Source: Guillardia theta CCMP2712 (Eukaryota; Protista; Cryptophyta). From it: a stretch of DNA of 64,000 nt. The stretch is from contig NW_005434665.1 of assembly GCF_000315625.1 (NCBI RefSeq), positions 1,004,796-1,068,795 on the forward strand, in the 5' to 3' direction. The first letter of the stretch is position 1, and each line of letters starts with the position of its first letter. Below are positions 32,615 to 64,000 of the stretch, in pieces. The notes under the pieces are model-generated. The model worked only from the letters and a program-made list of their open reading frames with translations. It had not been told where the DNA came from and made no database searches. Made by a program: the position numbers and the translations under genes.

Positions 32615-35590
32615 TCACTCGTAAGCTCGCATTTCCATCTTGGAAGGAAGGTAGCGGTTGAGTCCTTCCCGTAGTCGCTCGGGTCGCGTCTCGTTGGCCC
32701 ACGGCTCCCCGTAGACAACATTCCCCTTGAGGATCATAGTCGTTCCTATCGCCCGCGTGTCCGGCTCCTGCTTCATCGTCATCTTATCCTGCTCCTCCTC
32801 ATCCTTCCCCACCTTGTCGACGCCCCACATCACACTCTCTACATCCTCATCGAACGATTCCTGCACATGTCTTCAACCTCAGCCTCTCCTCGCAGCTTGT
32901 CACCTCCTCGTTCTCTTCCTCGTCCTCCGGTTGCAACTTCTTCTGATTCTCCAGCTCCTCTCGCATGTTTTCAAAGCAGTACGGGGACTTGGGATACGCA
33001 GCAAAGGCAGCAGCTGCATTAAGTGATGGGGCAGTCAGAGGGCAAAAGGGCACAAGTCAGGAAGCATGAAAACGCAGGAGGGAGGAGGGAGGAGAGGCGG
33101 GGAGCAGGTGGAAGGGGTAACAAGTTGCACCTTTGTTCAAGTCAAACATGGAAAAGTTTGCTTCTACTCTTGCTTGTCCTCCAATCGAGAGAGCACAATG
33201 CCTTATGCTTCTGAAAGTGCTGGGGAGTTTGTCAGAGACGGAAAGAGCAGAAGAAAAGGGAGGAGGAAGGAAGGGAGGAGAGAGGAGCAAAGGTCGATAA
33301 AACTCGAGCGCGAACCTTCCGTTGATTCGAAGGTTCGCATGATCGAGAGCTCTCACCCCGCAGCCTCTCAACATACCTGTCTGTTCGATGCAGCAACTAC
33401 CAACCTCCGATCAGATAGAAGAAAGGAGAATGATGTACCGTACTTGTTCATGTTGGCAGAAGAATTCTGGATCAGCACAACTCCCTCGGCGCAATGGATC
33501 TTGGGGATCTGCGCTGTCTTGTACCTTGCGGTGAGGAGGCATTTGTAGTCTGCTGCCACCTTGCTGGATGTTGAGGACCGAACTCAGAAATGGAACTAGA
33601 GGAGAGAGAAGGGGGGAAGGGAAGAGAGAAGGGGAAGGGAAAGAAGAAGGGGATGGGGAGGGGGGAGGGGGAGGGGAGAAGTCCACCTGCCGAAACCTCC
33701 TATCCCACACCGGTTCAAGGTAACTCTGGAGCTGACTTCACAGACCACACAGCGACCTCCTCCGCATCGAATCGCGCAGACTGAAAACTTCCACGGCCCG
33801 CCAAGGATGCGGATGCTGCGCAGACGAGTCACGGCATGGAGTTGGAAGTCACTCGACCCACCATTGATCTGCTCCATCGCGAAACCCGTGGTAGTAGGTG
33901 ACCTGCGCGGCTGTCAGTGGAGTGGAAGGGGGACAATGAGACAGGTACAAGCATGTCTTCGAAGGATCCCCTCGATCTCAGGCCTAAGATCCACTGTCCG
34001 CACATCTTAGAGTTCGGGTTGCAAGGCCTTACTGGAAACTTGGAAGCTGCATCATCATCGATTACGACGAGGCGAGAGAGAGAGGAAGGGAAGGAGAGGA
34101 GGGAAAGGAGGATGAGGGAGGGGAGGGAGGGGAGGGAGGGAAGGAGGGAGAGGAGGAGGAGGAANNNNNNNNNNNNNNNNNNNNNNNNNNNNNNNNNNNN
34201 NNNNNNNNNNNNNNNNNNNNNNNNNNNNNNNNNNNNNNNNNNNNNNNNNNNNNNNNNNNNNNNNGAGGGAGAGGAGGGAGGGAGGGAGGGAGGGAGGGAG
34301 GGAGGGAGGGAGGGGAGGAAGGGAGGGAGGGAGGGAGGGAGGGAGGGAGGGAGGGGAGGGGAGGGGAGGGCGGATAGAGAGTAGAAGCAAGGACCGTTCA
34401 CGTTCGATGCTCCTTTGAGCAACAACCGATTGTTGACGTACAAGAACCTCGACATGTCAATCTCTTTGACTCCAGGGTTTATTTCGACGCCCCTTCCTGA
34501 CAGAGGATCCGCCTACAATCTCCATCAATGATCCAATGCTCACAGACATCAACACATCACGATCTCCGTCTTCTTGACTTTGTCAAACTCCACATACGTT
34601 GCAATCGGTGGCACGAAGAGAAATTTGTCCTTCATCTCCTCATCTATGGGCTCATAATCCCTGAAAGATCTCAGTGAAGAGAATTCTTGATGCACCACAG
34701 ACATACCAGTCCAAGAGGGCCTTCACTCTACGAGACTCTATATCTTGATTCAGTTCTCTGTTGGACGGTCTCACTCTGTCCCATGCGTATCTTCCGGCCT
34801 TGACAAACAGCTTTTGTGGCTTGAGGCGGCTGAAACGATGAATATGACAATGAAATACTTGAAAACAGTCGTATCATCACCAGAACACTTCATGGATCGT
34901 CGAATTGCCGTCAGGGAAAACGGTATGATCCGACAACGCGGTATCAGGAGCTGTAGCACCCTCACGAGACTTGAAAACAGCTTTTGGCATTTTTTCATTC
35001 TGTTTTGGGAACTTCCAGTCCTCATCCTTCAAGTCGTCAAGGTTGTCTTCTTCGATCTCCCCCTCGACTTCTTTCGCAGCCTGCAGCATATCGTTGTAAT
35101 CGATGATCATCTGATCCCCACTAGCCGAATCATCCATGATATTGCCCATGACATCAACTTCATCCTATTAGCAGTGTCAGAAACCTTGAAGGAGCTTTCA
35201 AGGCCAACACACCTTCAGCATCTTCTTCGCGGCTTCCATTCGCTTCATTCGCAAGCTTTGGGCTGGAGTGATCAGGTCCTTCTTGTCTTTCTCGACCGGG
35301 TCAATCAGTTCCCAGCCGTCTCCCTCGAAGGTCAGAGTGCGATTCTTGAAGACGATACTCTTGTTTGACAACTTGGTGATCCAGTTCAGATGGGTCACCC
35401 GATACTTTTTGTTCAATTTCTTCTTCCCCCCTCCACGCAGGCTCTGCAATGGCAACCATATAATACCCTTTGAGCGTCTGACCAACAAAGTGAAGCCCTG
35501 GCCAAGGTTCTCATCGTAGTAGCCAAGATTGAAATTGATTGAAACAGAAAGAAATACAAGAAGAATCCAAGGAGGAGGGTTGCCTACCAT
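32615..35590 (-). CDS. Hypothetical multi-exon protein with signal peptide, LRGG motif and possible beta-helix C-terminal region
   Basis: Chain of minus-strand exons from MVGNPPPWILLVFLSVS...LQSLRGGG to ...ILKGNVVYGEPWANETRP; alternating hydrophobic/Cys/Gly strands (LGGPWKFSVCAIRC, VTLNRCGIGG); spans the gap at ~34165-34263. Confidence 0.55.
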
Positions 35591-36413
35591 GTTGCTTCTT
35601 CCCCTCTAGGGATCGGTCAAAGGAAACTTCATATGATTATCACCCGCCACGCCTCTACTGTTCTTCATGTACATCTGTTCCTCTGATCCTGTTTGGTCTC
35701 TGTTCTAACATGATCATGCTTGTTGTCTGCTCTTCTCAACATGCTCCTTCTCCTCGCCTTCGCGCTTCTTTGTCGGCACGTGATCTCCTCAACCGCATCA
35801 ATCCAGCGGTCGCATGGTGGAACCGTTACAGTTCTCGTTATATAACAACTGTGTTGTACCGTTACTCATTCACCTATCATGAAGGTAACGGAATTCTAAC
35901 GGTGAGGAGCGGACCTCTCGAGTCGGGGATTCCGTTTGACCACTCGGACCCATCACCCCCCCCCACTTCCAGGAATTACGTCTGTTGTTGTGTGGTACCC
36001 CCTCCAGACCGCGTCCAACCACCCCCTATTCCCCTTCCTCTCTCGTTTACACCCGGGCCCCTCCTCAGCTTACCCTTTCCTCCCCTTTTCGTATATCGCA
36101 CCACCCCTGCTGATAAGCCCCTCCACCCCCACCCCTTCCTCGTAACATGTCACACGACCTTGCAAAGATGCTAACTCATAACACCGAAGGAACCCACCAC
36201 CCCTGTCGATTCTGCCACCCTGGCAAGGTCGCCATCACCCCCTTTTGAATGACCCCCTCTTTTCCAGACCCCCTTTTTATTATCTGCAGACCCCTCCATC
36301 TCTCAGTGCCGGCTCACCTGAAAGCTACCTTCTCTCCAGTTCACCCCACCCCTCCTGTGCTCACCCTCCTCTTCCTCGCCCCCATCTGGTGCCTTGCAAC
36401 CATTCCCCCTAGC

Positions 36414-37276: not shown

Positions 37277-37516
37277 CTCTCATCCTTTATCCGATGCCAA
37301 CAAAACTTTCATGGCTGCAGAAGCTAAGGCCAAGAGAGTGCTGGAGCTTGACGACATTCCTGGCGAAAGAAAACTTTGCAAAAAAAGGCACCAGATTTGA
37401 AGCTGTGCTAGGCTATTTTGTTACATTATTGGATCAGAAAACCAGATTGAGTGGATCGAGTGAAATTAAGAGTGTGCAACATTAAAAATTAATTGCTTGA
37501 GACAATGCAAATGGAA

Positions 37517-40047
37517 CTACCAAGACCACTTGCTGTTGATTTTCAACCACAAGATTCCTGCGTTTGAGAATGGAGAGACATCATCTCGTTTCTTGAACCT
37601 GATTCTCACTGATGCTTCTCCAAGCATCACACTGACAGGGCTCACCACATACGTCGCATGTGCAAAACATTTCCTTGCTATCCGTTCTCTTGCTACAAGT
37701 GCGGAGCTTTCAATGAGATAGAGATGCAACGAATCTTTCCGTGCTTCCCCACCAGACACCTTAGGCACATGTCAGTCTAGTTGCCACAGGCATGGCAGAT
37801 GTTACGATTGGGAAGGGCGGCAAATGCTGAGCAACCTCAGAGCTGAATGTTTTGATCGCAGTTGAGAAAATTTCCTCCCCGTCATAGATTGCAACGAGAG
37901 ATAAACTCGAGGACGCAAATGGCAGAGGCGTCGCCATTTCCAACGTGTGGATAGCGATCATAACCTCCAAGGTCCCTCCCATCTCTATCCGCATCTGGTG
38001 GAACAACATCTCGTTGGTTGGCATGCTAACGACGTCAACAGTGTCGTCAAGCCGTCTGGAGGATCTCGGGATCGACTTGGACATGTCGCTCAGTCCGCAT
38101 TCCTCGTGACAATTGACGGCAAAGTGATGTGCTGGGCTGCTCTGCTCGTCAAACTGAGCCTCACTTCTCCTCAGGCCCATCACGCCGGCCGTGCTGTTGG
38201 TGGGGCACAGGCAGACTCGAAGCTGAGAAGCGTCTTGCTCCTGTGTGTCTCCCAGCTTGACGACGCAGAGGTCATACTGCCTTGTGAATATCGAGGGGTC
38301 TGAAGTCACGCGATACGCGAAGGTCAAGCTGCTTATCTCTTGCGCGCTGACTGTCACTTTCCATCCGAGCCGTTCAGCTGAGTCAACAAGTTTCTTGAAC
38401 TCTCCGTCGCTTGCGCTTTCGAAACCGAATCGATGCGAGACGAAGAGCAGCGAAGGCTGAAAGACGTCGGTTACCTTCTTGCCCTTCATGTCCGTCAAGA
38501 GGAGGAAGGGGCTCAAAAACGCTTTCGATTTGACCAGCTGGGTTGTGTCCCTGAGCTCGTCGTGATACGCATCGTGAGGGCACTCGAAGAAGAGCCCCAC
38601 GTTCTGCAGCATCCCAGCTATCATGTTGCTGTCTGCCTTGCGCATACCCAGCTCTGCTGAGAACTCGTCGACAAGAGGCCGCGTGCTGACTATGACGCCG
38701 TAAGGGATGACTGCATGTGGCTCTTTCAGCGTCATGTTTCGCAAGCACATGATACTTTTCACTTGCAGCGATCGATTGCCAAACCGAATGATCCTCATCA
38801 TGAGCTCCACTCCTCCCCCGACGATGATGCGAGCTGGGTTCTTACACGCCACGTTCTGCAGCACGTCCAGCGCTGTTTGCCGATGCTCGTTGGTGGGACT
38901 TTCTCCCTCCTTGAGCAGTTGTAGAAGGTACTTCAGCCCGCCATTGGCACACACGATGTTGCAAGCTCTCAAGTCTTTCGTCAAACTCCATATCACCTTG
39001 ATGCTCAGGAGCTGAACCGGGAGGATGTCCTTCTTTGCGATGGCGAGCAGAAGAGCAACACTCCTATCGCTTATCTCTTCTCGCGTTATGCTTCTCGTCA
39101 CTGATTTCTTCATCCTTGCGGCATGTGCAAATGTTTCCTTGCAGGCGTCGTCGATGAACTCGCCATTCCACACCCTCCCTTCGCTGAGCGAGATTCTCAG
39201 CAGCTCCTCGAGAACGTCTCGTCGTGACAAGTTTGACTGACGCGCAAAGGGGCTGGAGGGATCAGCGAAGGATGTTTCATTGAGAGCATCCAAGAGGAGA
39301 GACAGGCTGTCATGCACATGAGCGAAGCTCTTGTCTTTCTTGACGTTCAGGTCTGGATCTTTCAGAGGCATTGGAGATGCTCAGTTGCATTGACCTTCAC
39401 GTCAATCATCTTTCTCCTTCTCCTGCTGCTCTCCCGCCTCTCTCAAGCCTCCCCCCCCCCCCCCACCCGTGATTACCCCTCCTCCTCCTCCTCCTCCTCC
39501 TCCTCCTCCTCCTCCTCCTCCTCCTCCTCCTCCTCCTCGTCCACCTCCCCCCCCCCCTCCCCCGGTCTCCCCCTTGTTCTCTTCCCATCGCATGCGGTGC
39601 CTCTATCTTGTAGGCGCATCTGCAAGGACCTACACAGACTTGCTGGAGGGGGGGGCGGAGAAGAGGAAGAGGGAAGAGGAGCGAGGGGGGAGGAGGAGAG
39701 GAAGGGGAGGGGGGAGGATGGAAGAGGAGAGGGAGGGAAGATACGAGGGGAGAGGAGGAGAGTTCGATGTTCTAGACGATTTCGACTGACAGCTCAAAAC
39801 TTGCGATGTCAAGTCGAACCAAGAAGCATTCTACAGGACATGAAATGTACGAGTCTTCTATCATCAAAGGGCTTTCAACCATATGCAAGCGAGCTGAAGA
39901 GAAGGACTGAGTGAACCAGGACGGTGGAAGTAACGAATTCCTCCTCCAATATCTTTTAGAAGTCTTGCTCCAAATCCCAAGTTTCAATTTCACTTCAACC
40001 TCAAAAGACATACCAAAGTAAAGCAAGCCTTCATCCATCGCTACCAT
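37517..40047 (-). CDS. Armadillo-repeat protein with a possible C-terminal C2-like domain; upstream exons uncertain
   Basis: 536-codon exon (37761-39371) with ARM-like units (IVCANGGLKYLLQLL, ALDVLQNVA, GGGVELMMRII, SIMCLRNMT); beta-rich tail; small candidate exons up to ~40047. Confidence 0.6.
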
Positions 40048-40149
40048 AGCCGTCGCCGTATCATCACACCTTCCATAACAAGACAAAGATGGACTCGACA
40101 ACCACTGCTCTGAGCTCAGCAAAGTTCTTCTCTCTAGTCCCGCCGCAGA

Positions 40150-40827
40150 TCATCTTCTTGCGCTCTTGCCGTCTTCTTCCCTTCGCTCCTGTAGCCGATG
40201 CCCCGCGCCCCTCCATGGCCTCTGCAGCCAGTTGGAGACGAGGAGCCAGAACATGGTCACGGCCTCCAGCGCGATGATGGAGTCCCTCCAGGACAGGTGG
40301 AAGTAGCTCGGCTTGGAGCGGGTACAGAGGTAGACGAAGAGCGCATCGAAGAGCGATTGAAACAGCAGCGTCCTTCTGATCGAGCTCAGTGAAGCTGCCA
40401 TCAGCACGTAGTACAACTTCATGATCTGCATCACAAACAGAGTGAAGGAGAAAGCGACGAAAGCCATGATTCCTAACAGGCCATGGCTGCTTCTTTCCTC
40501 GAGGAACCCGAGGCCTCCTGGCTGTCTGGCAACGTTGAACACGACGAGGAGCCCTTCGAAGCATCCGTACGCCCATGCCGTTCCGCAGAGGTAGACGAAG
40601 AACTTGAAGACCAGCGGGATGTCCGACCTCCCCACTTCCCTCACGCCTCCTCGCAAGCGCAGGGCACCGACAACAGAACAACATTGCTTCTGATGCTTCT
40701 GATGCTTCTGATGCAATAGAAAAGCTCTTGCTGGACCCGCTTGCCTTCTCGTCAACTGTCCGACGTTTGCAGGCAAGGCCTCAACGCAGAGAACGCCAAG
40801 GAAGAGAATCAAAAACTTTGCAATCAT
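40150..40827 (-). CDS. Multi-pass membrane protein with signal peptide and LRLRGG motif
   Basis: Single 225-aa ORF: MIAKFLILFLGVLCVEA, ALRLRGG at aa ~55-61, then about four hydrophobic helices. Confidence 0.75.
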   Translation of the reverse strand: MIAKFLILFLGVLCVEALPANVGQLTRRQAGPARAFLLHQKHQKHQKQCCSVVGALRLRGGVREVGRSDIPLVFKFFVYLCGTAWAYGCFEGLLVVFNVARQPGGLGFLEERSSHGLLGIMAFVAFSFTLFVMQIMKLYYVLMAASLSSIRRTLLFQSLFDALFVYLCTRSKPSYFHLSWRDSIIALEAVTMFWLLVSNWLQRPWRGAGHRLQERREEDGKSARR

Positions 40828-41316
40828 TTCACGCTCAACCTCTCAGCAGGGACGAAGAATGCACATGCCCTGATGGTTTGTGAATTTTTTCTTCTGAGGG
40901 GAGGGAGACTTCCAAGAAAATTTCTTCACTCACCTCCGTTCACTCGATCTCGTGCTCGACTACTTCTTCATATCACACTCTCAATTCCTGAACAAACCTC
41001 TGTTTCCCTCCTTGCACTATCCTCTCCTCCTCTCCTCCTCTCCTCCTCTCCTCTCCTCTCCTCTCCTCCTCTCCTCCTCTCCTCTCCTCTTCTCTTCTTC
41101 TCCTCTCACCGTCCTCTCCTCTCTTCTTTGCCTCTCGCCGCTCCTCCTCTGGTCTGCCAAAGTAGGACTGACATCAACCCTGCTGACACCCCCACCCCCC
41201 CATATTCTTCTTTCCATTTTTACCCCCTTTTTAATACTCAAATCAACCCCTCATGTATGACCCACCCCTTTTTACCCAGGCTTTCTGGGAAAGGGACATA
41301 CAAGGGGCAAGCGGCC

Positions 41317-42603
41317 ATGATGGCAGGTAGGACGCGAGCGGCAGCAGCCGCAGGCGTCGCGATGCTGCTTTGCTCTTGCAGTGTGGAGGCCTTCTATGGG
41401 GGAAGCAGCATGCTTCCTCGTGCTCAGCTGCTTCAGAGACACGCTGTGTCTGCACGAAGATCTCCCAAGACTGCGGTATGCATGGCAGCAGCCAGTAACA
41501 ACGCAGACAAAAGCGTTGATGCTATCAAGTCAGAGGTGGGATCAATCCTTCAAGGCTCACCAGTTTCTATTCCTGACGCCAAGAGCACCATGTCTGAGCA
41601 AGCTCCTCGCGGAAGCGCTACAAAGATGCTGCAAGATAATGAACCTGAACCCTTCAAGGACCCCAGCCGGACGCCTCCTCCCAAGTCATTCCGCATGTGC
41701 GTGGAACAAGCTTACCTCTCGGCGAAGCAGGCGATTGAGGATGGACACAAGCTGATCGAGATTGAGTTTCCTCCGCTTCCGCAATCTGCCATGGACAACG
41801 AGGCTATCGGAGCTGACACGATCTTGAAGGCTCAAATCCAGCACTCGACTGACTTTGCGAAATTGTTCAAGAACAAGAAGACTGCCATCGTCTTCGCTGA
41901 TATTGTTGAGAGGAATCGATTCATCGACGACGAGACTTCCTCCAACCCGCAATCATGGAGGGGAAACATCCGCTTCACGGCGTTGAAGGGAGGGTTCAAG
42001 GGATCGCTCATTGAGCGCGTGTGGATCAACAAAGACTTCGTGTCGGAAGTGCAGGAAGACGACGATATGTTCATCATCATCGGAGCTTCTGCTCAAGAGC
42101 TGCCTGACGTGCGAGAGCTCTGCAAGGCGGCTGGTGATCGACCGGTCATCCTGTTCAACCTCAAGCTGCAGGTGCTGAGGGGAGACTTTGGCCTCCCCTT
42201 CTTCCCTTCAAAGAGCTTGCACAACGACTGGCTGTGCGAGGCTCTGCCCGCATACTTCATGCTCCCCAAGTCCTACACCAAGACCATCGCCGGCCCTCCC
42301 TTCCTGATCAACTACTCTGGCGCTCTCTTCCGAACGTATCCGGGCAAGTGGCAGATGCTGTTGGAGGTCCCCGACGAGGACGGAGGCGGGAGGTATCAGC
42401 GTGTGCGGATGCTCGACAAGCGACCTGCCCTCTCCGACGTTCGTGAGGAGCTGGCCAAGGAACTTCAGCTCGACGGCCTGGATGGGGAGGAGGGGCAGGA
42501 GATCTTTGGGCTGAACTTGAAGCAGCTCAGGAACGGAGTCGTCGTCAAGACTTGGTGGGAGAAGGATCTGGATGATGCCAAGTCCGACAAGTGGCGATCG
42601 TAG
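41317..42603 (+). CDS. LPA3: Plastid-targeted DUF1995 protein, LPA3-like (PSII assembly)
   Basis: Signal peptide ending VEA-F followed by a transit-like region; AKQAIEDGHKLIEIEFPPLP, LFNLKLQVLRGDFGLPFFPSK, PPFLINYSGALFRTYPGKWQ; intronless. The ORF-track start at 40741 is an upstream in-frame extension. Confidence 0.85.
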   Translation: MMAGRTRAAAAAGVAMLLCSCSVEAFYGGSSMLPRAQLLQRHAVSARRSPKTAVCMAAASNNADKSVDAIKSEVGSILQGSPVSIPDAKSTMSEQAPRGSATKMLQDNEPEPFKDPSRTPPPKSFRMCVEQAYLSAKQAIEDGHKLIEIEFPPLPQSAMDNEAIGADTILKAQIQHSTDFAKLFKNKKTAIVFADIVERNRFIDDETSSNPQSWRGNIRFTALKGGFKGSLIERVWINKDFVSEVQEDDDMFIIIGASAQELPDVRELCKAAGDRPVILFNLKLQVLRGDFGLPFFPSKSLHNDWLCEALPAYFMLPKSYTKTIAGPPFLINYSGALFRTYPGKWQMLLEVPDEDGGGRYQRVRMLDKRPALSDVREELAKELQLDGLDGEEGQEIFGLNLKQLRNGVVVKTWWEKDLDDAKSDKWRS

Positions 42604-50400: not shown

Positions 50401-52238
50401 GAGATCTCGTCCTCGTTCTTGACGCGAGCATGCGGCAATTCTCCTTTGCTCTGCTGACTAGATCAGCTCCTAAGAAAGTTTCGGCGATCGAACAGCAACC
50501 TCTCCGTCCGATCCCTGAGAAAAAATGTTGACCGCCTGTTTGCGACAGTCAGCAAAGACATTCAGATCGTTTCATGGGACAAAGACGTCCATACGTCGTC
50601 ATCGGAAGCGAAGTCATCTTCATACTGCTCTTCTTCGACGTCAGCATTCTCTCCTTCTTCCTCCATCATGTCGCCGCGATCCACATCCTCGGAGTAGAGG
50701 TCCTGCACAGAACAATCATCTGAGGGCACAGAGACGTTGCCACTGACCTCATCTGAGTCCGCGCTTTGGAATTCCGAGACGGTGTGGAGGCTTTGAAAGA
50801 CAAGTGAACAAGAGGTAGATTCGTCGTCCACCTTCCTACCCTTGCTTTCCGGCTGCTCTCAAACTTTGATCTCGCGATGAACGGATCGGCTTCGGCATTT
50901 CACCCGTCCGAATGTATCGTCCTACTGATCTTCAACTGCGCAACAAGGTACAGGAGTCTTCCTACCGACAGGAGAAGTAATCGCCTTCTTCCTTTCTTTC
51001 TCTTGAGCCGAAAGTTCGATTCCCCGCGCTCTTCCGTCCAACTTTTTTCAGAGGACCAACACATGGATCGACAAACTAAACCTGAGTTCCTCAGAGGTGT
51101 CGATGTCATGCAGAACTTCAACCCAATCCTTGCAAATTGCGTCATGGTCGCAAGACAAATACTGTCATGTGTACCAAAGCTTCAATGAAGCCATCTCCGT
51201 CCCGATCCAAGAACTGGAACAACTGAAATACACAGTCAACAAAGCAGGCGAACAAACTAGGAGCTACAGCATGTGAAGCTTCTTCTGAAAGATCCATGTT
51301 GATAGACTCAATCACCGACATCCAGTCTTCTAGATGTATCCTGCCGTCCCTCAATGTAAGCAGGACCACACAAGTTCATTCACAGTAGCATGCCTGCCAT
51401 CGTTGTCAAGATCGAACTGATCAAACCCATCTTCCAGTGAAAGCTCGTTGTACTGTAGGTGCACAGTCTGCATCAGTATCGAGACTTTGACTTGATTCAG
51501 TGACCTTGAGTGTAGCAGCAAGGATCCTCAAAGAGTCTCGGACTAGACTTCCCTCTGCCCGACCGTCCTTGTCCTCGTCAGGCTCTGTCTGCAACCAGTC
51601 TTGCCCCTGCTCCGTCTGCAGGAACGAGTGTTCAATGCGATCATCACGCTCCTCAGTGCATGGGACACCTCGAGCCAAGTGCGCCCCTCCTCTGAGACCA
51701 GCCATTGCATGCTCTCTCTGGTTTGTTCCATGGACGGCGGAGCAAGCCTGATGACTGACCCTCTCATAGTCTGGATCTGTATCGATCCTTTCTGCCATGC
51801 GCTTCTTTGACGGACGTTGCTCCTTTGATCTGAAACCCTGTCATGCTCCCCCTCCCGGGATCAAGCACAAGTCAGGAACCTTTTCGGAGGGCTCCTCCTC
51901 CTTTGTCGTTCTCTTGCTTCTTTCGGATCCTCTCCTCGTTGGCTCCGAGAAAGTTGACCTGAGCATGCTTCAGAACCGAGCAGTGACATCCACAGGCGCA
52001 CCTCAAATCCTCTTTCCCGTTGCGCGAGGGCTTCCTTCTTCTTCTCCTCCTTCTTCCTGAGCTCCCTCAGGATCCTGTTCTTCTCTTGCAGGACTGCAAG
52101 GTATTCTCGATAGGACGGGTCCACACCCTTCCCAGCCAACGAGTCTGACTTGACATCTGTATCCTTTATGTTCACTGCCTGCCCCGTCCTGTCCCAAGTC
52201 TTCCTCCTCGTGGCGCCATCGGTCCTGGGCTCCGACAT
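44500..52238 (-). CDS. KATNIP: Katanin-interacting ciliary protein KATNIP (KIAA0556) with four DUF4457-type repeats
   Basis: N-terminal [15 protein letters not shown]...ERGFE; four repeats of S(T/N/H)WGD..Y.GL(S/T/N)GIE.FD ... D.H.WL.PF ... R.WNYNKS; many introns. Confidence 0.88.
47550..47650. repeat. 22-bp tandem repeat (AGGAGAAGACAACATGACAGGT, ~4.5 copies), intronic
   Basis: Directly visible, with a few substitutions. Confidence 0.9.
47783..47921. repeat. (CGTCT)n followed by (CATCT)n pentanucleotide arrays, intronic
   Basis: Directly visible. Confidence 0.95.
48835..49025. repeat. 39-bp pyrimidine tandem repeat (~5 copies), intronic
   Basis: Unit ~CCTCCTTCCCTCTACCTCTCCTGCTTCCTCCTCCTCTCC. 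Confidence 0.9.
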
Positions 52239-54329: not shown

Positions 54330-54397
54330 CCTAATTCGATCGCTGTATTGTTCTTGTTACGAACGAGCATAGCGCATGTAGAAATGAAACTTCGTAA

Positions 54398-55471: not shown

Positions 55472-57548
55472 TTAGTAAATCTTATACACGCTGGTGGGAT
55501 CCGAGCGACAGATTGGACATGGCCTTGAAGCCGCTCCTTCCTTGTGGTTCTCACAGAGACATTTATGTCCACAGGGGATGAGCGCCCACATGGCCTCTCG
55601 TTCCAAGCAGATGACGCAGAGCTGGCTATCTATGTCTATCTCATCCTCTCTTAAACTCTCTGCAACGGCTGCGTCATGCTGTTGCTGAAGCTTTCTATGC
55701 AAGTCGCTAAAACGTGGCCGCTCTGACTTCTGCTCCCTCCAACATTCCAGCATGATACTATACACAGCTGCAGGGCACGAAGGGGGGCTCGGAAGTCGCA
55801 CACCACCAAGTACCTTGGATCCCACAAGCGAATCGTCCGTGACGGTGCAATACGGAACTTTCCCGTACGTCCAGATCTCCCACAAAGTCACACCAAACGC
55901 CCATACATCGCTCTTCTCCGAGTACTGCCTTCTCTCGATGCTCTCCGGTGCCATCCATCGGATTGGGCGAGTCGTCGACCCTGCCGTACTGAAACTCGCT
56001 GCATATCTCTCTCCGTACCCGCGCGCGGACATGACAGACAACCCGTAATCAGCGATCTTCACATTCACATCCAAGTGATTCTGTGCATTCAGACGGAACA
56101 CAAGCACGTTCCTCGCTGCCAGGTCCCGATGCACGACCTGATGCAGAGAGAGCTGTACCATCCCGTCGCAGACCTGCCTCGCCACCTGCAGCTGCACCAG
56201 TAGACTGAGAGTCTTGCGTTCCTCTGCGAGGCTAGATAACACGACATCCAAGGAGCCCTGAGATGCAAAGTCCGTCACCATGCAGTAGTCGCAAGAACCT
56301 GGCTCAATTGTGATAGCAAGAAGGCGAAGGAGATTCGGGTGGAGCCCCAAGTGCTGGAAGATCTTGACCTCCTGCTCGAACTCCTCCCTCCTCCCAGTGG
56401 ATCCGCTGCCACGGATTCGTTGGATAGCTACTTCAGAGCTGCCTCCATTCGGCTGCTGCCATCGAGCCTTGTAGACGAGCTTGAAGGAGCCTGAGCCGAT
56501 CTGCCGCACATCGGTGAAGGCTTCGAAGTTGACCGACGGGATGCCACGCGAAGGCTAAAGAACAAAATGTCAAAGACATCCAAGCCATATAGAGACGGTA
56601 ACCTGGGACACAACGACATGTTGCTCCGTCTCCTTTAGCTCCTTTCTCTCAACACTGTTCGTCTCACGCACTTCACTTTTTGAGGAAAGAACGTTTGAAG
56701 TTTCACATTCAATTTCAATGCATCTCGCAGCTGTCGCAGCTTCACGATCCGAGAACTTGCCCTGGATTCCTCGAGAATCACTAGCAAATGTAGAGGACTT
56801 TCTATATTTTCTGTAGACCAACAAGAGAGCCACGAGCACAGTCGGAATAACGACTGTGATCACAACGATTGTTGTCACACTCGACTTGCTAGGGCTGGCT
56901 GTCGAAGTTGGGATTCGTGCTGCTGCTGGTGATTGAAATGGGGGTGGTTGAATCAAAAACAACATCTGAAAAACATGACATCAATATAGATAGATTGAAA
57001 AGGTGTCAACCACCTTGATGATCATCACAATCAGTTCCACTCGCACATGGATTCAAGTTGGCGTCCATGATAGTAAAATTAGGCCATGACAGATGATAGC
57101 ACGTCAGATTGTTGCCTGTCAATCTCAAAGTGATAAGCGAAGACAAACTAGTGAAAGACTGGGAGGGAATGCAGGAAAGCCTGTTGTAGCTAAGATAAAG
57201 ATACTGCAAGCTCGAGAGCCCGTCGAAGATCCCAGCTGGCAGACTTTCCTGATAGTTGTTTCCAAGGGATAGGTTGTTTTGGTCTAGATGCAGAAACTGC
57301 AAGCTAGAGAGCCCGTCAAACGTTCTATCCATTATGTTCCGAATACCCATTAAATTCAAACACAATCTTTTGTAACCCCGCATATCAGTTCCACAGTCAC
57401 CTCCACAGATTCCCTTCCTCGACAACAAACCCTCACCCGAGATGTGAAACGTGCAGTTTCCACAGCTCACGCTGCCTGCTGCCTCGGTCTGCCTTCCCCA
57501 GCCTCCAAGTAACATCAAAAGCACACACATCCCCAGCACTCGCTTCAT
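55472..57548 (-). CDS. LRR receptor kinase with tyrosine-kinase signatures and C-terminal RING finger
   Basis: Signal peptide MKRVLGMCVLLMLLGG; LRRs (LPAGIFDGLSSLQYLYLSYNRL); TM IVVITVVIPTVLVALLLVY-RKYRK; kinase GSGSFK, HRDLAARN, DYG, RPIRWMAPE, SDVWAFGV; RING CVIC...PCGHKCLC..H...CPICR. Confidence 0.9.
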
Positions 57549-58123
57549 GCTCCTCCTTGACTGATCTACAGCAATCCCAGCATGGGCACTCGGCGAGTCA
57601 GCCTTTCTTGTCAACTCACCAGCTGATTTGACCACTCGCACTTTGACTAGACACGTACTACCAACATACTACTACTACTAGCTAGCTAGCTATAGCTAGT
57701 GACTGTACTGTAGGTATCCTCTAAAATACTATAAACTCGTGGTACTCTAAAACACGTACTCTTGACTATGTATGTCATGACTGTGAATGTTGCTCCGGTT
57801 TGCCCTTCTTTTTCAGTTCGTCTTACACATATGATGAATTGAATGGTCGAATCGCCGGCGATACAAAAGCGCTCAGCGGCTTATATCGTTACGGATCCAC
57901 TCAGTCAGCCAGACCTCGTGCCAATGATATCAATAGCAGACGATTCGTGGACACTCAGCACAGCTGCTTGATGGAGAGCCGCAGAGCGGCTTCGTCGGAC
58001 TCAATCTATTTAGCTCCTCGAATTGGACTCAGCGGCTAGCTCTAGAACTCGGATCGGTGCTGACTTTGAATGTCACAGAACTCAGAGGGCCTTTTCAAAT
58101 CAACATGTATTTGTCGGAGGGCA

Positions 58124-59977
58124 TCAATCAAGACGTAAGACAGGACTAAAGTTCGGATCTGAGGGGGGAGGAGGTACGGGCACACTGCTCCTGAAGCCGA
58201 AGGTGGACCTGCAAACTTGAATGAGAGGAGTTGTCTGAGCATGGTAGATGTTCAACAGGAGGAAGGAGGCCATGGTTCGGAGAATTGCAAACACAAGAAT
58301 CTCTGCCAGGACCTGGAGGGTCCAGTCATTTAAAGGAGCGGAAGGGATAATGATAGTAGAAGTCAAAGTACCGAGAGGACAAGGCCAGTCACAACAAACA
58401 AACCTGAAATGGAACAAGTGAGTTCAATAGGACTTTCGCCTGTCAAAGGTGTATCATGAATGACCGTCTAATTCAGCAATGCCAAGAGCAATCAGAGCCA
58501 TGCAGATGGCAGGAAGCTGCGAGAACAAGTCAAAGACAACTGAGAAGAGATCCTTGCGTTGACCTGGGTGCTGAAGGGAATAGGAAGCATAACGACGACT
58601 GAGAGTTGGAGCATGAAAATCGCTAAAGCTTGCTCAACAACCTGTAATTGAGAACATGATATGAAGGGACAAATGATTCGGCCTTTTACGGGATTCTGCA
58701 TGAAGAACCATCTGTGCTTGGCAAATTTGTTTGTAGCTGGATGCAAGCATTGTTAACTTGCACACAACTGTCGTTCTAAATCAAACCTCTGATCGCTGGC
58801 AGCCCTGAGCTTAGCATTGAAACAAGGTATCGTTTCTTGATTCTCATCTTTCTTATCCACTCCTGAAGAAAGCAGACATGAATGGATTGAAGAGCACATA
58901 CATTAGAGATACTGGGAGGACTGGGATTCGACTTCCTGAAATCATCTGACAAGACAAATAGAACTGTTCAAGATTCCGTCATCGTGGGCAAATACTTGAG
59001 AGTTTGAGTTTGACCTGTCCCATCCCAACAAACATCCCAACACCAGGAAGACCTGGTTGATACGATGCGAAATTTCGTCAGAAAGAGTTTGCAACCGAAC
59101 GAGAGAGACTCGGCCCTACAACGTACCTAGTGCACTGGGCAGTGAAAGCAGTAAGAAGAGCACCTGACAAGCATCAGACCACAACATGCGACAACGGATG
59201 AATCGCACAGGAAATGCCGAAGGCCCCAGCAGTGCCAGCACGTCTCCGAAGGAGATGGTCTCGAAGTCATGACGGAAATCTCCCGGGGACGTGGATAGGG
59301 TGTCGTTGACCATGCCGACTTCACGGGAGCAGATGCTGATGACCGACTCGATCACCTGCGAGACTCGAGCTGGAACACGGCTGTCTTGACCTTGACAGTC
59401 GCATCAGAATCGTGGGAGATCCTCTCCTAGATCTACCTTGGTTCACGCTAGTTAACAGATTCCGCTTCACCCTCAGGGACCTCGGCGAGAGGTGGCGGAA
59501 AGATGGTCTTGCCCCCATCTCCTGAGAGGCCGCCCTGGTTGGATCACAAGGTCGTCTAGGGACCTCAAAGTCGCTGTCATCAAAGATGGTAGAGTCTTCT
59601 TCTCGCAAGGTTATCAGCGATCGGTTGCCTTGTTGGTCCCCAGCATGACTTTGGTTCAAGGACAAAGGCATAGAACAATCCTTGTAAGGAAGACCTTCAT
59701 TCGTCTCATCCTCTCCTCCCCGCAAGCGCAGAAACACCACCTGATCCAAACCTGTGCTGTCAGAATAAAACGCCTGGGGATAAGGAACCCTGACCTCATT
59801 GTTTCTAGACCTGTGAAGATGTATCCTTGGGCAAGAAGTGACAGGCTCGTGCACATACAAGCAACTAGCATTCACAAAGAGAAAGAGGAGGATGACGGGG
59901 AGGCCAGACCCCCTTGTCAATCTTATCCTTCGTATAGTGGATAGAATATACGTAACAAGCCACTGATCCGGTAACAT
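58124..59977 (-). CDS. Hypothetical protein with N-terminal hydrophobic segment, LRLRGG motif and probable multi-TM C-terminal exons
   Basis: First exon LPVILLFLFVNASC...VVFLRLRGGE; downstream short hydrophobic minus-strand exons; 3' end unresolved. Confidence 0.45.
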
Positions 59978-60641
59978 TGGTAGGATCAGGAGGGTTGAAG
60001 TGCTATGCCAGAAACAAATCTCATGGCTGGAAAGCAACCTTGCCTTCTACGGTTTGCATCAGCGACGATGTACACCTGTTTTCATTCTTCAGCATATCAG
60101 ATTCATATTCACATCCAAAAGCTTGCACTCGTCAACCCCTTCCTTGCTTTTCTCCCCTCATCAACGTACCTTCCCACAGCCCACTCCCTTCACTGCCCTC
60201 CTCTTGCCCTCTGTCTCTTTCTCCCATCTGTTTCTCACGATCCCTCCACCCACCTCTCCCTGCTCCTGCTATCTTCTCCGTACAACCTCTCCACCCTCCC
60301 CTCTCCCCTCTCCCCAGCCCTGTAGCTCTTCACCTCCTGCCTGCTCCTGTAGCGCCCCTACAGCATGCAAATCGTTCACTACATCGATCTGTGATATAGA
60401 TATTAGGCATCCTCCAATAGAATATTCATATCACCTTGACCATGAATATAGAAATTCAATATATATTACTTAATAATCCTAAGAATGAACTATTAATTCC
60501 TATATTGTATAGGAAATCTGTAGTCCATCGGGCACCCTTTGCGCGGCAGGCTGTCCTGAGATCGAAGCGATTCTGATCGAAACAGTTTGAAAATTTACTA
60601 GACCGACTGGTGAAAGTGAAGGCAACAGGATGGGCGGCACC

Positions 60642-62080
60642 TCAGGCATTGAAGTCGAGGCCGAGGCGGTCGTACATGACCTGGTTGTTGTCCGTCCATC
60701 CTTTCCTCAGCTTGACTTTGAGAAACAGATGGACTGTGCATTCGAGGAACTTCATCATCTCCACGCGCGATCTTGTGCTGATGTCTTTGATCATGCCTAT
60801 CAGAATCTTCTTTTGCCCCTCCGTCTCCACAAAAATTGTCTGCTCAATGCGAATGCTCCCGTTCGGCTGCGTCTCATACGACTCCGTCTCCACGTAGCAG
60901 GCGTAGGGAACCTCCTCGTGAGCACGCAAGAAGATGGATTCACGCGTGAATTCTGCCACTAGATTGCGCATTGGAATGTTCGAGATCTGATCAACAGGAT
61001 ACAGCCATGGTCCGAGAGGGAGGCTATCCTTCAAGTAGGCCTTCAAGGCATCCAGTCCTCTTCCTGTCTTGGCGCTCACCGCAAAACTTTCTTGATCATC
61101 GATTCTCCATTGTCATGGACCCCGGCAGACAATCGCAGCGTCTCTGCAAGCTGCAGCAGCACTGGGCGCCTGTCGCCTTCCAGCTCATCAACCTTGTTGA
61201 GGATCAGGTTGTAGCGTTGACGTCGTTCCGTCAACCTCGACATGATCAGCTCCTCGTTGGTTCCAGCACGCAATTTCAAACGCTCCGGATCAACCGGAAG
61301 AGTCAAAGGAGCAGATTTTCTCCCAGTTCTCCCAGGCCCAGTCCCCCCGGGGATAATCTTGTCCGCGTCGATCAGAAAGAAGATCTCGTCAGCGTCACGA
61401 GCGCTGTTCCAGGCGGACTTCACCATGGCTTTGTTCAGCCTCTGCTTGGGTTTTGGCGCCATGATACCTGGTGTATCGATGTAGATGACTTGTGTTCCTC
61501 CCTCCATCGCGATCCCGTTGATGCTGTTCCTTGTCGTTTGACGCTTGTGGGTCACAATAGCAACTTTGGATCCAACTAACGCATTCAGCAAAGTGCTCTT
61601 GCCAGCATTAGGAGCCCCGAGAATGGCGACAGTCCCGCATCTCTTGGGGCCTTCAAACACATAGTCCTCATCCTCGTCCTGCTGCTCCTGATACATTTTC
61701 TGCATCTGCAATTGAAGGTCGTCTTCAATCGGCACCTCGTCGTCTGCGATCTCTACCTTGCTAGCTTCGTCTTCTTGATGATGGTCCTGCACTGAGTCAT
61801 GGACGTCCTTGTTTCCACTCGTTACATGCATTCTCGTGAGCTCCTCTTTCATGTTTCGATCCGATGGGCCAGAGAAGAAGAAGCGAGGATGATTCAGACT
61901 TGTTTCATGCACGTTTCGGGTTCTGAATCTGAGTGTGCATGCCTCCAAGGTGTGCATGCGGCGCATTCCATGAAGGACACTGACAGGCTGAATGAAGGCT
62001 ACTGATGTCGATGACGGCTTGACAAGCTGCATAAGAAGTAGTGTACGAGACATGCAAGCACCAATCTTGTTTGAACTCAT
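60642..62080 (-). CDS. era: GTPase Era (organelle-targeted), frame break at ~61080
   Basis: VAILGAPNAGKSTLLN, VTHKRQTTRN, DTPG, NKVD, VSAKTG, then KH region HEEVPY...QKKILIG...VHLFLKVK; N-terminal extension containing VAF. Confidence 0.92.
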
Positions 62081-62625
62081 CTTCCTGCCATTGAACGTCA
62101 GCTAAAAGTATCATATTACTTTTGCACATGGCAAAGACATGTCAAAAAGTCCCTCTTGCATAATTCCTGGTGAAATTTGTGCACGATTACCCGCGACACA
62201 TTTCGAATCTTCTACTTGTACATTTATGACAAGTAGACAAATGTATCCCATCACGTGTGATTCTACTTTCAGAAATTCGCTTTTCAGAACTGAAAATTCA
62301 AAACTGGCTCTGGTTTGCTGCCGACTATCACTACTCATCTTTCTCACCTCTCTTATTCAGCTTCCCTTGTTGTTTCAACCTCTTGCTCTCCATTCCTCTA
62401 TCGCTATCAGCCATCCTCCCTCTTCTTCTCTCCTCCTTCCCGCTCCCTTCCTCTCCTCCCCGTGCGGCATTGTCAGCCCCATTGCCATGAGCACATGCGG
62501 CCGCTCCTCAAAATGTTTACTCAACAAAGATACCAAAAAGCCTACTATATAAGTAATCTTTTTCTAGTAGTTGTGAAACTACTCAACAAGATATAACTAA
62601 AATCAGCACGGCATTGAGTCGCTCC

Positions 62626-64000
62626 ATGGTGTGGGTCGTGTGCCTGGCAATGGCGGGGATCGGGCTGCGACTGCAAGGAGGAGGAGGAGGAGGAGCAGTG
62701 AGAGCAGCAGCAACATCAGCATTTGCTGCTGCCTCCTCAGTCTCCTCAGTCTCCTCAGTCTCCTCAGCCTCGTTGGCTGCTAGAGCATGGAAGAGAGGGT
62801 TCTTGACGCGCGTCGTGGGCCCCTGTAGACTAAGAGGAGGAAGCTTTTTCCCTGATTGGATTCAGAGGAAGGAGAGGCTAGGAAAGTACAGCCCGTACGC
62901 CGCCGAGAGACAACTGACTACCTTGGAGGAGCCTGAGGAGGTTGGAGCTTGTTGTTGAAAGCTATCATGACTTGGCAGTGGTCCAGGGTGGCAAAGTTGG
63001 CGCGTTGTTCGGTCTCTGCAACTTAGCGACTCAAAACATGGTGGAGGGAAAGTATGTGACAACGTCTTTCCTTGCCCAGTGTTGGAAGCTCTCTTTTGTT
63101 GAAACCTCGCGATTGCAGGTTGCAACTGTACGAAGGGGATTTCGAGCTCATATCCACCTGTCTGAATGACATCACGCCAGAGGAGTTTGGCTTTCCTCCG
63201 GTCTTCAGTTTCTACATGCTCGAATCTAGTCTGAAAGGTTTGGCAGAGCCGAGACGACGGGAAGCCGATCATCGACTACGTGGACATGTATCCCAGTCTC
63301 CTTTGTTGGATGTTATTCATGTCGACTTTTCCAGCTTTGAGGAGAAGAATTTCACCGCCTGCATGTTCAAGATTCCAGCAGGATCTCGCCTCCCGATGCA
63401 TGATCATCCTGGGGTTAGTCTTCTAGCGATGCTCCCAGCAGCTCATGAGAGGATGGTAGATGTACGTCTGGAGCAAAGTACTCTGGGGAGAGATGGAAGT
63501 TTCATCCTACGACCGGGAGACAGCGCAAGGTCGTAGAAAGGAAGAGAACAGAATCGAGGCGTTTGACATGTTTCTTTCAGCGACCCCGCGAGACAAGTCC
63601 TTCCCTTCATTACCCTCTCAAGCTCTGGACCTCCGTCCGTTCAAGGTTAGCGTTGACCTCGGTTTGTAGAAGCTCAGTGGGTTTCAGGTCAAGACCAAGA
63701 GAGATAGAGAGGTTTGGAGGAGTGAGGACGGCGTGAAGATCACGACACCCACGGAAGGGAACATACACGAATTCCGGTGACAAGAAGATCAACAGCTGGC
63801 AACGTGCTGACGTCATGGTGGGCAGGGCGGTCACGACCTGCTGCTTTGTAGACGGTGCCAGACACCTCACTGTGTCCTTGTTCTGATGTGCTTGCAGTCA
63901 TCATGCCTCCGTACGACTTCATGCAGGGACGGCGCTGCACCTACTACGAGATCAACGACAGGGAGGATGGGACATGGGCCCGGCCCATCCGTTGCCCCGC
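62626..64000 (+). CDS. Plant cysteine oxidase/cysteamine dioxygenase (PCO/ADO) family protein with signal peptide and RLRGG; truncated by window end
   Basis: FTACMFKIPAGSRLPMHDHPG|MYVWSKVLWG, NIHEFR|AVTTCCFVD|VIMPPYD...GRRCTYY. Confidence 0.88.

What the first reader, a model, noticed from the sequence alone, without database searches (positions are those of the whole stretch)
35429..62841. Four unrelated proteins carry signal peptide + spacer + ubiquitin-tail mimic (LR)LRGG: candidate DUB-cleaved targeting system
Seen: LQSLRGG (35429-35440, -), ALRLRGG (40645-40662, -), FLRLRGG (59714-59731, -) and CRLRGG (62827-62841, +), each about 35-50 aa after an N-terminal hydrophobic segment. The proteins are otherwise unrelated (beta-rich protein, 4-TM protein, multi-TM protein, thiol dioxygenase) and the codons differ, so the constraint is at protein level. 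Established: LRLRGG is the ubiquitin C-terminus that deubiquitinases cleave after, and red secondary plastids import proteins through an ERAD-derived, ubiquitin-linked machinery (SELMA). Inference: these are bipartite presequences removed after GG by a DUB-like protease, possibly defining a periplastid or other non-stromal cargo class distinct from the AF class (LPA3 here has AF and no LRGG). I cannot judge from the sequence how far this has already been described.
Basis: partly seen in the sequence, partly recalled or inferred. Interest (0 to 1): 0.85.

Follow-up and report, generated by a model that had tools for sequence, protein, structure and literature searches.

The report
Ubiquitin-tail motif ends cryptophyte periplastid leaders
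In the cryptophyte alga Guillardia theta, proteins sent to the relict cytoplasm and nucleus of its red-algal endosymbiont carry a signal peptide, a short variable linker and then ubiquitin's last residues ((L-R)-L-R-G-G) just before the start of the mature protein in the cases that can be read. The motif is kept across cryptophyte genera, is probably the long-sought site where this targeting leader is cut off, and I found no description of it in the literature.

Summary
Observation confirmed and generalised. Each ends an N-terminal leader of 54-72 aa that starts with a hydrophobic segment. Transcript contigs cover two of the four leaders.

Genome-wide, 34 of 73 sampled LRLRGG-type sites lie 35-76 aa behind an ATG plus hydrophobic core, against about 3% expected (p about 1e-32).

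Cargo is of periplastid-compartment (PPC) or nucleomorph type:
- eEF1A, the AspRS copy independently predicted as PPC, and HAT1;
- SAP, RRM and CBM20 proteins;
- five of six starch synthases.

In eEF1A the mature domain starts right after GG. Met follows GG in several others.

Cryptophyte orthologues of starch synthase and HAT1 (Hanusia, Teleaulax, Hemiselmis, Cryptomonas) keep SP + [LMI][RK]GG while the rest of the leader diverges. Stromal LPA3 (Phe class) never has it (0/14 cryptophyte-like homologues).

Best reading: this is the C-terminal processing site of the PPC-class bipartite leader, cut after GG by a ubiquitin-tail-specific protease. Cleavage and the enzyme are inferred, not shown. 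The literature I could reach calls the leader peptidase unknown and reports ptDUP absent from cryptophytes; I found no prior description.

The scan already reached the same conclusion on other DNA of this genome (s1-430515, s1-430463).

The parts
35429..35590 (-). Gene 1 leader (54 aa): ATG, hydrophobic core PPPWILLVFLSVSINF, linker, LQSLRGG. The motif LRGG is at 35429-35440. The mature part has no assigned family.
   Evidence: Pfam finds nothing. There is a weak, unconfirmed oxysterol-binding-protein lead.
40645..40827 (-). Gene 2 leader (61 aa) ending ALRLRGG. The whole ORF, 40150-40827, encodes a 225-aa four-TM orphan protein.
   Evidence: The only relative, P0121, is 96% identical, has the same length and keeps ALRLRGG although 5 of its 10 substitutions lie in the leader.
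59795..59977 (-). Gene 3 leader, exon-1 part: ATG at 59975-59977 and hydrophobic core LPVILLFLFVNASCLYV.
   Evidence: Transcript contigs of runs X1, X2 and X7 span 58089-60077.
59741..59794 (-). 54-nt in-frame GT..AG intron inside the gene 3 leader, directly upstream of the motif.
   Evidence: The joint 59738/59793 (cut +2) is present in three runs. The GT..AG register was checked.
59714..59740 (-). Start of gene 3 exon 2: VFLRLRGG. The spliced leader is 70 aa; acidic residues follow (EDETNEG).
62626..62841 (+). Gene 4 leader (72 aa), from the upstream ATG (MVWVVCLAMAGIGL) to CRLRGG. It lies wholly in exon 1 (62609-62938). The mature part is a PCO/ADO-type thiol dioxygenase.
   Evidence: Transcript contig X2 starts at 62609, and GT..AG introns begin at 62938. 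PCO_ADO matches fall on two consecutive exon pieces.
41317..42603 (+). Internal contrast: an LPA3/DUF1995 gene with a stromal-class leader (signal peptide ending VEA, then Phe) and no LRGG.
   Evidence: [LIMV][RK]GG in the first 120 aa is found in 0 of 14 cryptophyte-like and 0 of 106 other homologues.

Best explanation
The four motifs are instances of a genome-wide, pan-cryptophyte feature: the C-terminal end of the bipartite leader that takes nucleus-encoded proteins into the periplastid compartment (PPC) and nucleomorph.

The leader has three parts:
1. An ER signal peptide.
2. A 15-55 aa transit-peptide-like linker. It is Ser-rich and acid-poor, has more Arg than Lys, and has no Phe at its start.
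3. A copy of ubiquitin's tail, consensus [LM]-[RS]-L-R-G-G, with K tolerated at -3 and M or I at -4.

Proposed route (inferred):
1. Co-translational entry into the ER lumen and removal of the signal peptide.
2. Passage across the periplastid membrane by the ubiquitin- and Cdc48-dependent SELMA machinery.
3. In the PPC, a protease that recognises the ubiquitin tail cuts after GG. This releases the mature protein and removes the linker, perhaps together with any ubiquitin attached to it.
4. That cut would also stop onward import into the stroma.

Shown here: the motif, its position, its cargo class, its conservation, and its absence from one stromal-class family. Inferred: the cleavage itself and the kind of protease.
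For: 1. Positional enrichment. 27 of the first 60, and 34 of 73, genomic [LF][RS][LF][RS]GG-coding sites outside the window lie 35-76 aa after an in-frame ATG with a hydrophobic core. Background is 3.2% (window) or 3.0% (unselected loci); binomial p is 1e-24 to 4e-32. This is a lower bound, because L013, L014, L026, L029 and L038 look like leaders but miss my threshold.
2. Protein-level selection. 34 of 34 motif 18-mers are distinct and use mixed codons.
3. Boundary.
   - In eEF1A, Pfam GTP_EFTU position 1 aligns at residue 4 after GG.
   - Met follows GG in L005, L013, L027 and L032.
   - In the GBSS-like synthase, GG lies 10 aa before the catalytic domain.
   - D+E rises from 6% in the linker to 15% after GG, while Ser falls from 14.5% to 9.9%.
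   - The residue at +1 is G, S, A or T in 26 of 44 leaders (p 9e-6) and never Pro.
4. Cargo.
   - eEF1A, HAT1_N, SAP, RRM, LisH-WDR26, a methyltransferase, CBM20 and RETICULATA-like.
   - Five of six starch synthase genes; cryptophyte starch is made in the PPC.
   - Of three AspRS paralogues, only the copy on C19 has SP + LRGG, and PMC4494062 independently predicts aspRS3 as PPC.
5. Conservation.
   - 12 of 12 signal-peptide-bearing cryptophyte starch synthase homologues have SP + [LMI][RK]GG. They include Teleaulax, Hemiselmis rufescens and Cryptomonas paramaecium.
   - 7 of 7 leader-bearing HAT1 relatives have it too, including Hanusia phi.
   - The rest of the leader is unalignable, and non-cryptophyte homologues lack leader and motif.
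6. Class specificity. 0 of 14 cryptophyte-like LPA3 homologues have the motif, against 19 of 37 starch synthases (Fisher p 4e-4).
7. Context from the literature.
   - The leader peptidase is unidentified: 'TPLs are somehow then removed' (PMC5756292).
   - ptDUP is absent from Cryptophyta and an alternative enzyme is expected (PMC12412216).
   - All four sequenced nucleomorph genomes encode a putative DUB with a Ufm1-specific-peptidase domain and unknown role (PMC6559170).
8. Established knowledge. Invariant Gly-Gly with Leu at -4 and Arg at -3 is the specificity of ubiquitin/UBL-tail cysteine proteases. Some of these enzymes, such as coronavirus PLpro, cut linear LXGG sites without a ubiquitin fold.
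Against: - No experimental N-terminus, mobility shift or cleavage assay was available, so cleavage is inferred from boundary statistics only.
- Most cellular DUBs need the ubiquitin globule for efficient catalysis. The linker is too short and too variable to be a beta-grasp fold.
- No candidate protease sequence could be examined here.
- Signal peptides were called with a hydropathy heuristic, not SignalP.
- The stromal negative control is one family plus one AsnRS paralogue.
- The in-window cargo (two multi-TM proteins, a thiol dioxygenase, one unknown) is not itself diagnostic of the PPC.
- How many PPC proteins lack the motif is unknown. The two other predicted PPC class-IIb synthetases could not be resolved.
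- Other red-plastid lineages were not surveyed.
Confidence: 0.6

Rival explanations
1. The motif is a cleavage site, but the enzyme is a conventional presequence peptidase placed in the PPC, for example an M16 MPP/SPP-type metalloprotease that reads Arg at -3. The likeness to ubiquitin's tail would then be coincidental.
For: - Arg at -3 with a small residue at +1 recalls the R-3/R-2 rules of mitochondrial and stromal processing peptidases (established knowledge).
- The linker has transit-peptide composition.
- A 'TPL peptidase' has been postulated (PMC5756292).
Against: - M16 peptidases do not require Gly-Gly. Here GG is invariant in every leader seen.
- The likeness to ubiquitin extends over six residues: L or M at -6, R or S at -5, L at -4, R at -3.
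- Stromal-class leaders, which do meet an M16 peptidase, lack the motif.
Confidence: 0.17
2. The motif is a recognition or sorting element that is not cut at GG. It could be a docking site for a SELMA or PPC factor, or a retention signal that prevents hand-over to the plastid envelope translocon. The leader would be removed elsewhere or kept.
For: - Conservation and class specificity demand function but not cleavage.
- The distance from GG to the first recognisable domain is long in some proteins. In the L124 starch synthase it is about 70 aa.
Against: - eEF1A's conserved N-terminus begins immediately after GG, Met follows GG in several genes, and composition switches exactly there. This is what a presequence/mature junction looks like.
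- An uncut 50-70 aa extension on eEF1A or Trm112 would be unusual.
Confidence: 0.15
3. The motif is a chance recurrence, a gene-model artefact, or a shared leader exon spread by duplication.
For: At the DNA level the bare four-residue pattern shows no genome-wide excess over the tool's reversed control: 12,115 against 14,038.
Against: - The positional test gives p about 1e-32.
- Leaders share nothing but the motif, and 34 of 34 coding 18-mers differ.
- Spliced transcripts contain the leaders of genes 3 and 4.
- The motif is retained in other genera while the surrounding leader diverges.
Confidence: 0.01

Closest known systems
Bipartite topogenic signal of periplastid-compartment proteins in cryptophytes and diatoms (signal peptide plus transit-peptide-like sequence lacking the +1 Phe)
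   Same: - An N-terminal ER signal peptide followed by a Ser-rich, acid-poor linker.
- No Phe-type start.
- Nucleo-cytosolic-type and starch-metabolism cargo.
- The same organism in which this class was defined.
   Different: The described signal is defined only by the absence of an aromatic residue at +1. The current predictor scores a 25-residue window at the signal-peptide cleavage site (PMC12136025). A conserved C-terminal LRGG box 15-55 aa further on is not part of any description I could find.
Ubiquitin, NEDD8 and ISG15 precursors and ubiquitin-ribosomal-protein fusions, processed after LRLRGG or LALRGG by DUBs
   Same: - The same hexapeptide.
- It sits at the end of an N-terminal part that is removed to release a functional downstream protein.
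- Gly-Gly is invariant, and Pro is absent from +1.
   Different: There is no beta-grasp ubiquitin fold in front of the tail; the preceding 15-55 aa are variable and of low complexity. The N-terminal part is a targeting leader, not a modifier.
Linear LXGG cleavage sites cut by DUB-fold viral proteases (coronavirus PLpro: LNGG, LKGG)
   Same: A short linear L-x-G-G site without a ubiquitin globule is recognised by a ubiquitin-tail-specific cysteine protease. The LKGG variants seen in some cryptophyte leaders match this pattern.
   Different: That system is viral polyprotein maturation. This one is host-encoded organelle import.
Double-glycine leader peptides of bacteriocins and competence peptides, removed by the C39 cysteine-peptidase domain of their ABC exporter
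   Same: An N-terminal leader ends in Gly-Gly and is cut off by a papain-like protease coupled to membrane translocation.
   Different: That system is bacterial. It has a different upstream consensus, with no Arg at -3, and no signal peptide or ubiquitin machinery.
SELMA deubiquitinase ptDUP of diatoms and haptophytes
   Same: It is the postulated step in which ubiquitin is removed from imported preproteins in the PPC.
   Different: ptDUP removes ubiquitin from Lys residues and is not known to cut the leader. It is absent from cryptophytes (PMC12412216), which is where the LRGG box is found.

Membership tests
PPC-class bipartite targeting signal (cryptophyte) | N-terminal ER signal peptide | tested here: met
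   A hydrophobic core (9-aa Kyte-Doolittle mean of 2.2 or more) lies within 30 aa of the ATG in genes 1-3 and in 34 further leaders. Gene 4 has the core only from the upstream ATG at 62626. This is a heuristic, not SignalP.
PPC-class bipartite targeting signal (cryptophyte) | Transit-peptide-like linker: hydroxylated, few acidic residues | tested here: met
   Linker composition is Ser 14.5% and D+E 6.3%, against 9.9% and 15.4% in the 40 aa after GG.
PPC-class bipartite targeting signal (cryptophyte) | No aromatic residue at +1 of the linker | tested here: inconclusive
   The signal-peptidase site could not be predicted rigorously. No ASAF-type junction is visible in the leaders listed. Gene 4 contains TSAFAAA, which is ambiguous. 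LPA3 shows the contrasting VEA|F junction.
PPC-class bipartite targeting signal (cryptophyte) | Cargo that works in a eukaryotic cytoplasm or nucleus, or in PPC starch metabolism | tested here: met
   eEF1A, AspRS, HAT1, SAP, RRM, CBM20 and starch synthases. The four in-window cargos are not themselves diagnostic.
Ubiquitin-like modifier or ubiquitin-fusion precursor | C-terminal tail L-R-L-R-G-G, or L-x-L-R-G-G | tested here: met
Ubiquitin-like modifier or ubiquitin-fusion precursor | Beta-grasp fold of about 70 aa preceding the tail | tested here: not met
   Only 15-55 variable, low-complexity residues lie between the signal peptide and the tail. None of 73 sampled sites has ubiquitin sequence upstream. 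These leaders are therefore not UBL domains.
Ubiquitin-like modifier or ubiquitin-fusion precursor | Endoproteolytic cleavage after Gly-Gly | not testable with these tools
   Only indirect evidence is available: position of the mature domain, Met at +1, and the composition switch.
MPP/SPP (M16) presequence sites | Arg at -2 or -3 with loose flanking requirements | tested here: inconclusive
   Arg or Lys at -3 is present, but the invariant GG and Leu at -4 go beyond the M16 rules.

The most novel reading that the evidence does not exclude
Cryptophytes solve two steps of SELMA import with one cut. Each PPC-bound preprotein carries ubiquitin's tail in cis at the end of its leader. A single PPC deubiquitinase-type enzyme clips off the whole, possibly ubiquitinated, leader. 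Candidates are the nucleomorph-encoded ZUFSP-like protease, or the OTU protease with a Cdc48-binding PUB domain flagged by first-stage notes. This enzyme would replace both the missing ptDUP and the unidentified leader peptidase, and cleavage would be what commits a protein to stay in the PPC. The motif would then be a simple sequence code for the PPC and nucleomorph proteome.
Probability: 0.3. Interest if true: 0.9.

Novelty: new variant of a known kind. Interest (0 to 1): 0.82.

Why it matters
How periplastid-resident proteins lose their targeting leader is an open question in complex-plastid biology. So is how they are told apart from stromal proteins, beyond 'no Phe at +1'. The peptidase is unknown, and PPC prediction is admittedly insensitive (25% recall in ASAFind 2, PMC12136025).

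A conserved, easily scored box that marks the end of the leader would do four things:
- It gives a direct predictor of the cryptophyte PPC and nucleomorph proteome, which is at least a few hundred genes.
- It pins the cleavage site to one peptide bond, testable by N-terminomics or point mutation.
- It offers a bait (LRGG probes) to fish out the enzyme.
- It ties presequence removal mechanistically to the ubiquitin dependence of SELMA, and so suggests why cryptophytes lack ptDUP.

It also flags N-terminally truncated public gene models. One example is GUITHDRAFT_73067, which starts after its leader region.

Tried and rejected
- Counting the bare four-residue DNA pattern genome-wide gave 12,115 against 14,038 for the reversed control. 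Chance sites dominate, so it is uninformative. The six-residue pattern gave 353 against 255.
- A stromal negative control with LHC genes failed. LPA3 homologues were used instead.
- For the same reason I could not fetch DUB genes (USP, UCH, OTU, ULP), the upstream exons of the other predicted PPC synthetases (asnRS3, lysRS4), or the C46 starch synthase leader. I did not try to get those letters another way.
- Papers not held: Curtis 2012, Deschamps 2006, Haferkamp 2006 and Stork 2012. PMC4494062 has no supplements held.
- Literature searches for LRGG or RGG with Guillardia, nucleomorph, transit peptide or plastid found nothing relevant. The diatom PPC paper PMC3101018 contains no such motif string.
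- Gene 1, the gene 3 exons and gene 2 have no Pfam family. The Atlas lead for gene 1 (oxysterol-binding protein, score 0.92, 121 shared features) is weak and was not confirmed.
- Gene 2 has no relatives beyond one 96%-identical sequence.
- No complex prediction was run, because no protease sequence was available.
- Raw RNA reads of run X17 were too sparse on this stretch (22 reads) to define transcript starts.

Full report
**Identity of the genome.** The window is G000:C9:1004796-1068795 of an 87.1-Mb assembly in 669 contigs, with 52.5% G+C. It has short GT..AG introns. The translation of one fetched locus (L127) is identical over its first 50 residues to GUITHDRAFT_73067 of Guillardia theta CCMP2712. 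I therefore take the genome to be G. theta, a cryptophyte. Its plastid lies inside a periplastid compartment (PPC) that still holds a relict nucleus, the nucleomorph.

**The observation.** LRGG is encoded at all four stated places. The six-frame translation of the window holds only seven LRGG, and four of them close an N-terminal leader.
- Genes 1 and 2 have in-frame stops just upstream of their ATG, and leaders of 54 and 61 aa.
- For genes 3 and 4, spliced transcript contigs from three runs cover the leaders.
- Gene 3 has a 54-nt in-frame intron (59741-59794) immediately before VFLRLRGG, so its true leader is 70 aa.
This supplies a real hydrophobic core (MVWVVCLAMAGIGL) and gives a 72-aa leader in exon 1.
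- Gene 4 is a PCO/ADO thiol dioxygenase.
- Gene 2 is a 225-aa four-TM orphan. Its only relative is 96% identical and keeps ALRLRGG.
- Genes 1 and 3 have no family.

**More than chance.**
- I took the first 98 genomic hits outside the window to a degenerate LRLRGG DNA pattern and fetched the context of 73 of them.
- With a fixed rule, 27 of the first 60 and 34 of all 73 qualify. The rule requires an in-frame ATG 20-90 codons upstream, no stop, and a 9-aa hydropathy mean of at least 2.2 within 30 aa of the ATG.
- The same rule applied to every six-frame position gives 3.2% in the window, 6.8% inside ORFs of at least 100 codons, and 3.0% in 31 unselected loci. Binomial p is 1e-24, 2e-16 and 4e-32.
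- Several further hits are obvious leaders that miss the threshold, so 47% is a floor.
- Leaders are 35-76 aa long (median 50), and GG lies a median of 32 aa after the hydrophobic core.
- All 34 motif 18-mers differ and use mixed codons.
- Within the degenerate pattern, Leu at -4 and Arg at -3 are required. Position -5 takes Arg or Ser.
- None of the 73 sites is ubiquitin itself.

**GG is the presequence/mature boundary.**
- In the eEF1A gene (L015/L068), the sequence after GG is GKEKHH..., and Pfam GTP_EFTU position 1 aligns at the fourth residue after GG.
- Met directly follows GG in four leaders. One of these reads MKLFTHNLL, which I recognise from memory as a Trm112-type start; Pfam did not confirm it on the 31-aa piece.
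- In the GBSS-like synthase, GG lies 10 aa before the catalytic domain.
- Composition switches at GG. The linker is Ser-rich (14.5%) and acid-poor (6.3% D+E), with more Arg than Lys. The next 40 aa have 15.4% D+E.
- Position +1 is G, S, A or T in 26 of 44 G. theta leaders (p 9e-6) and is never Pro.

**Cargo class.** Domains found behind LRGG leaders are eEF1A, HAT1_N, SAP, RRM, LisH-WDR26, a class I methyltransferase, CBM20 and RETICULATA-like. Two independent tests point to the PPC.
- Starch synthases, whose pathway is periplastidial in cryptophytes. Five of six genes show the motif upstream of the catalytic domain (NLRGG, SLRGG, SLRGG, RLKGG, RLRGG). Three of them have the signal peptide in the same exon.
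- AspRS. Of three paralogues, one has no leader, one has a mitochondrial-type presequence, and only the third (C19, L105) has SP + ...MCLRGG. PMC4494062 independently predicts aspRS1 as cytosolic, aspRS2 as mitochondrial and aspRS3 as PPC.
- First-stage notes list further nucleo-cytosolic cargo: eL22, LSm, importin, Rpn13, a nucleoporin and an Hsp90 co-chaperone. I did not check these.

**Conservation and specificity.**
- Homologues of the L124 starch synthase include many cryptophyte transcripts. All 12 that retain a signal peptide have SP + linker + [LMI][RK]GG. Examples are ILRLRGG, TLHLRGG, VLRMRGG, AMRLRGG (Teleaulax), TLGLRGG (Cryptomonas paramaecium) and TLHLRGG (Hemiselmis rufescens).
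- The leaders are otherwise unalignable, and non-cryptophyte homologues have neither leader nor motif.
- The seven leader-bearing top relatives of the HAT1 gene behave the same way. One is from Hanusia phi; the others are unnamed environmental sequences. Other eukaryotic HAT1 proteins start directly with the domain.
- The window's LPA3/DUF1995 gene has a Phe-class leader (VEA|F). None of its 14 cryptophyte-like or 106 other homologues has the motif in the first 120 aa. Fisher p is 4e-4 against the starch synthase set and 2e-14 against all controls.
- A plastid/mitochondrion-type AsnRS with an AGF|AP junction also lacks the motif.

**Mechanism.**
- The consensus [LM]-[RS]-L-R-G-G reproduces ubiquitin residues 71-76.
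- Invariant Gly-Gly, with Leu at -4 and Arg at -3, is the known specificity of ubiquitin/UBL-tail cysteine proteases. M16 presequence peptidases read Arg at -2 or -3 but have no need for GG.
- I therefore favour cleavage after GG in the PPC by a ubiquitin-tail-specific protease (confidence about 0.6 for the whole chain of inference). The motif being a real, conserved, PPC-class leader terminus I hold at about 0.95.
- The main weakness is that there is no ubiquitin fold in front of the tail. The enzyme would have to accept a linear site, as PLpro-type enzymes do.
- Literature context: the leader peptidase is unknown (PMC5756292). ptDUP is missing from cryptophytes and an alternative enzyme is expected (PMC12412216). 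All four nucleomorph genomes encode a ZUFSP-like putative DUB of unknown role (PMC6559170).
- First-stage notes also mention an OTU protease with an inserted PUB domain whose own leader ends RLVLRGG|M. I could not fetch or test either candidate.

**Novelty.** Searches of the held literature for LRGG or RGG with Guillardia, nucleomorph, transit peptide or plastid found nothing relevant. The 2025 predictor scores only 25 residues around the signal-peptide site. Two follow-up agents of this scan reached the same reading on other pieces of this genome. That is not independent evidence.

**Scale.** There are 353 degenerate-pattern sites, and at least 47% are leaders. In motif-unbiased examples, only about half have L or F at -6 together with R or S at -5. 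From this I estimate at least a few hundred genes.

Noticed in passing
window 61082 (GTPase gene 61076-62080, - strand): Transcript contigs of three runs all carry one extra A behind 61082, relative to the genome. The cause is either an assembly indel or a real difference. It falls within the last codons of the MMR_HSR1 GTPase ORF and would change its C-terminus.
   Followed up: no
L127 (G000:C46:108016-111414): The public model GUITHDRAFT_73067 (P0041) for this starch synthase begins at MRNEERGG, directly before the catalytic domain and without any leader. It is probably an N-terminally truncated gene model. Such truncations could have hidden the motif from proteome-based surveys.
   Followed up: partly
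window 40894-40905 (+): A fifth LRGG lies in the frame of the LPA3 ORF but upstream of its ATG, in non-coding sequence. It is a chance occurrence and not part of the system. The same holds for 44708-44719 (-) and 51685-51696 (-).
   Followed up: yes
window 59741-59794 (-): A 54-nt intron sits inside a targeting leader, is in frame, and contains no stop codon. Read-through would give a longer but still intact leader. The intron abuts the LRLRGG box.
   Followed up: partly
window 44500-47693 (-) and 55472-56509 (-): Two neighbouring genes were noted. One is a DUF4457 protein spread over at least two ORF pieces. The other fuses a Tyr/Ser-Thr kinase domain to a C-terminal C3HC4 RING finger.
   Followed up: no
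window 26463-26562 and 34165-34264: Two 100-N assembly gaps. The second lies inside or just downstream of gene 1 and prevents reconstruction of its full coding sequence.
   Followed up: no
L005, L013, L027, L032 (G000 C1:913473, C3:143825, C6:516438, C7:208360): Met directly follows GG. This suggests the leaders were added upstream of an existing start codon. It would also allow dual cytosol/PPC products through alternative initiation, as PMC4494062 proposed for tyrRS1.
   Followed up: no
window about 34300-34350 and 39700-39760 (- strand reading): CT-rich microsatellite-like stretches lie near the gene 1 and gene 2 regions. They read as SLPPSLPP... when translated.
   Followed up: no
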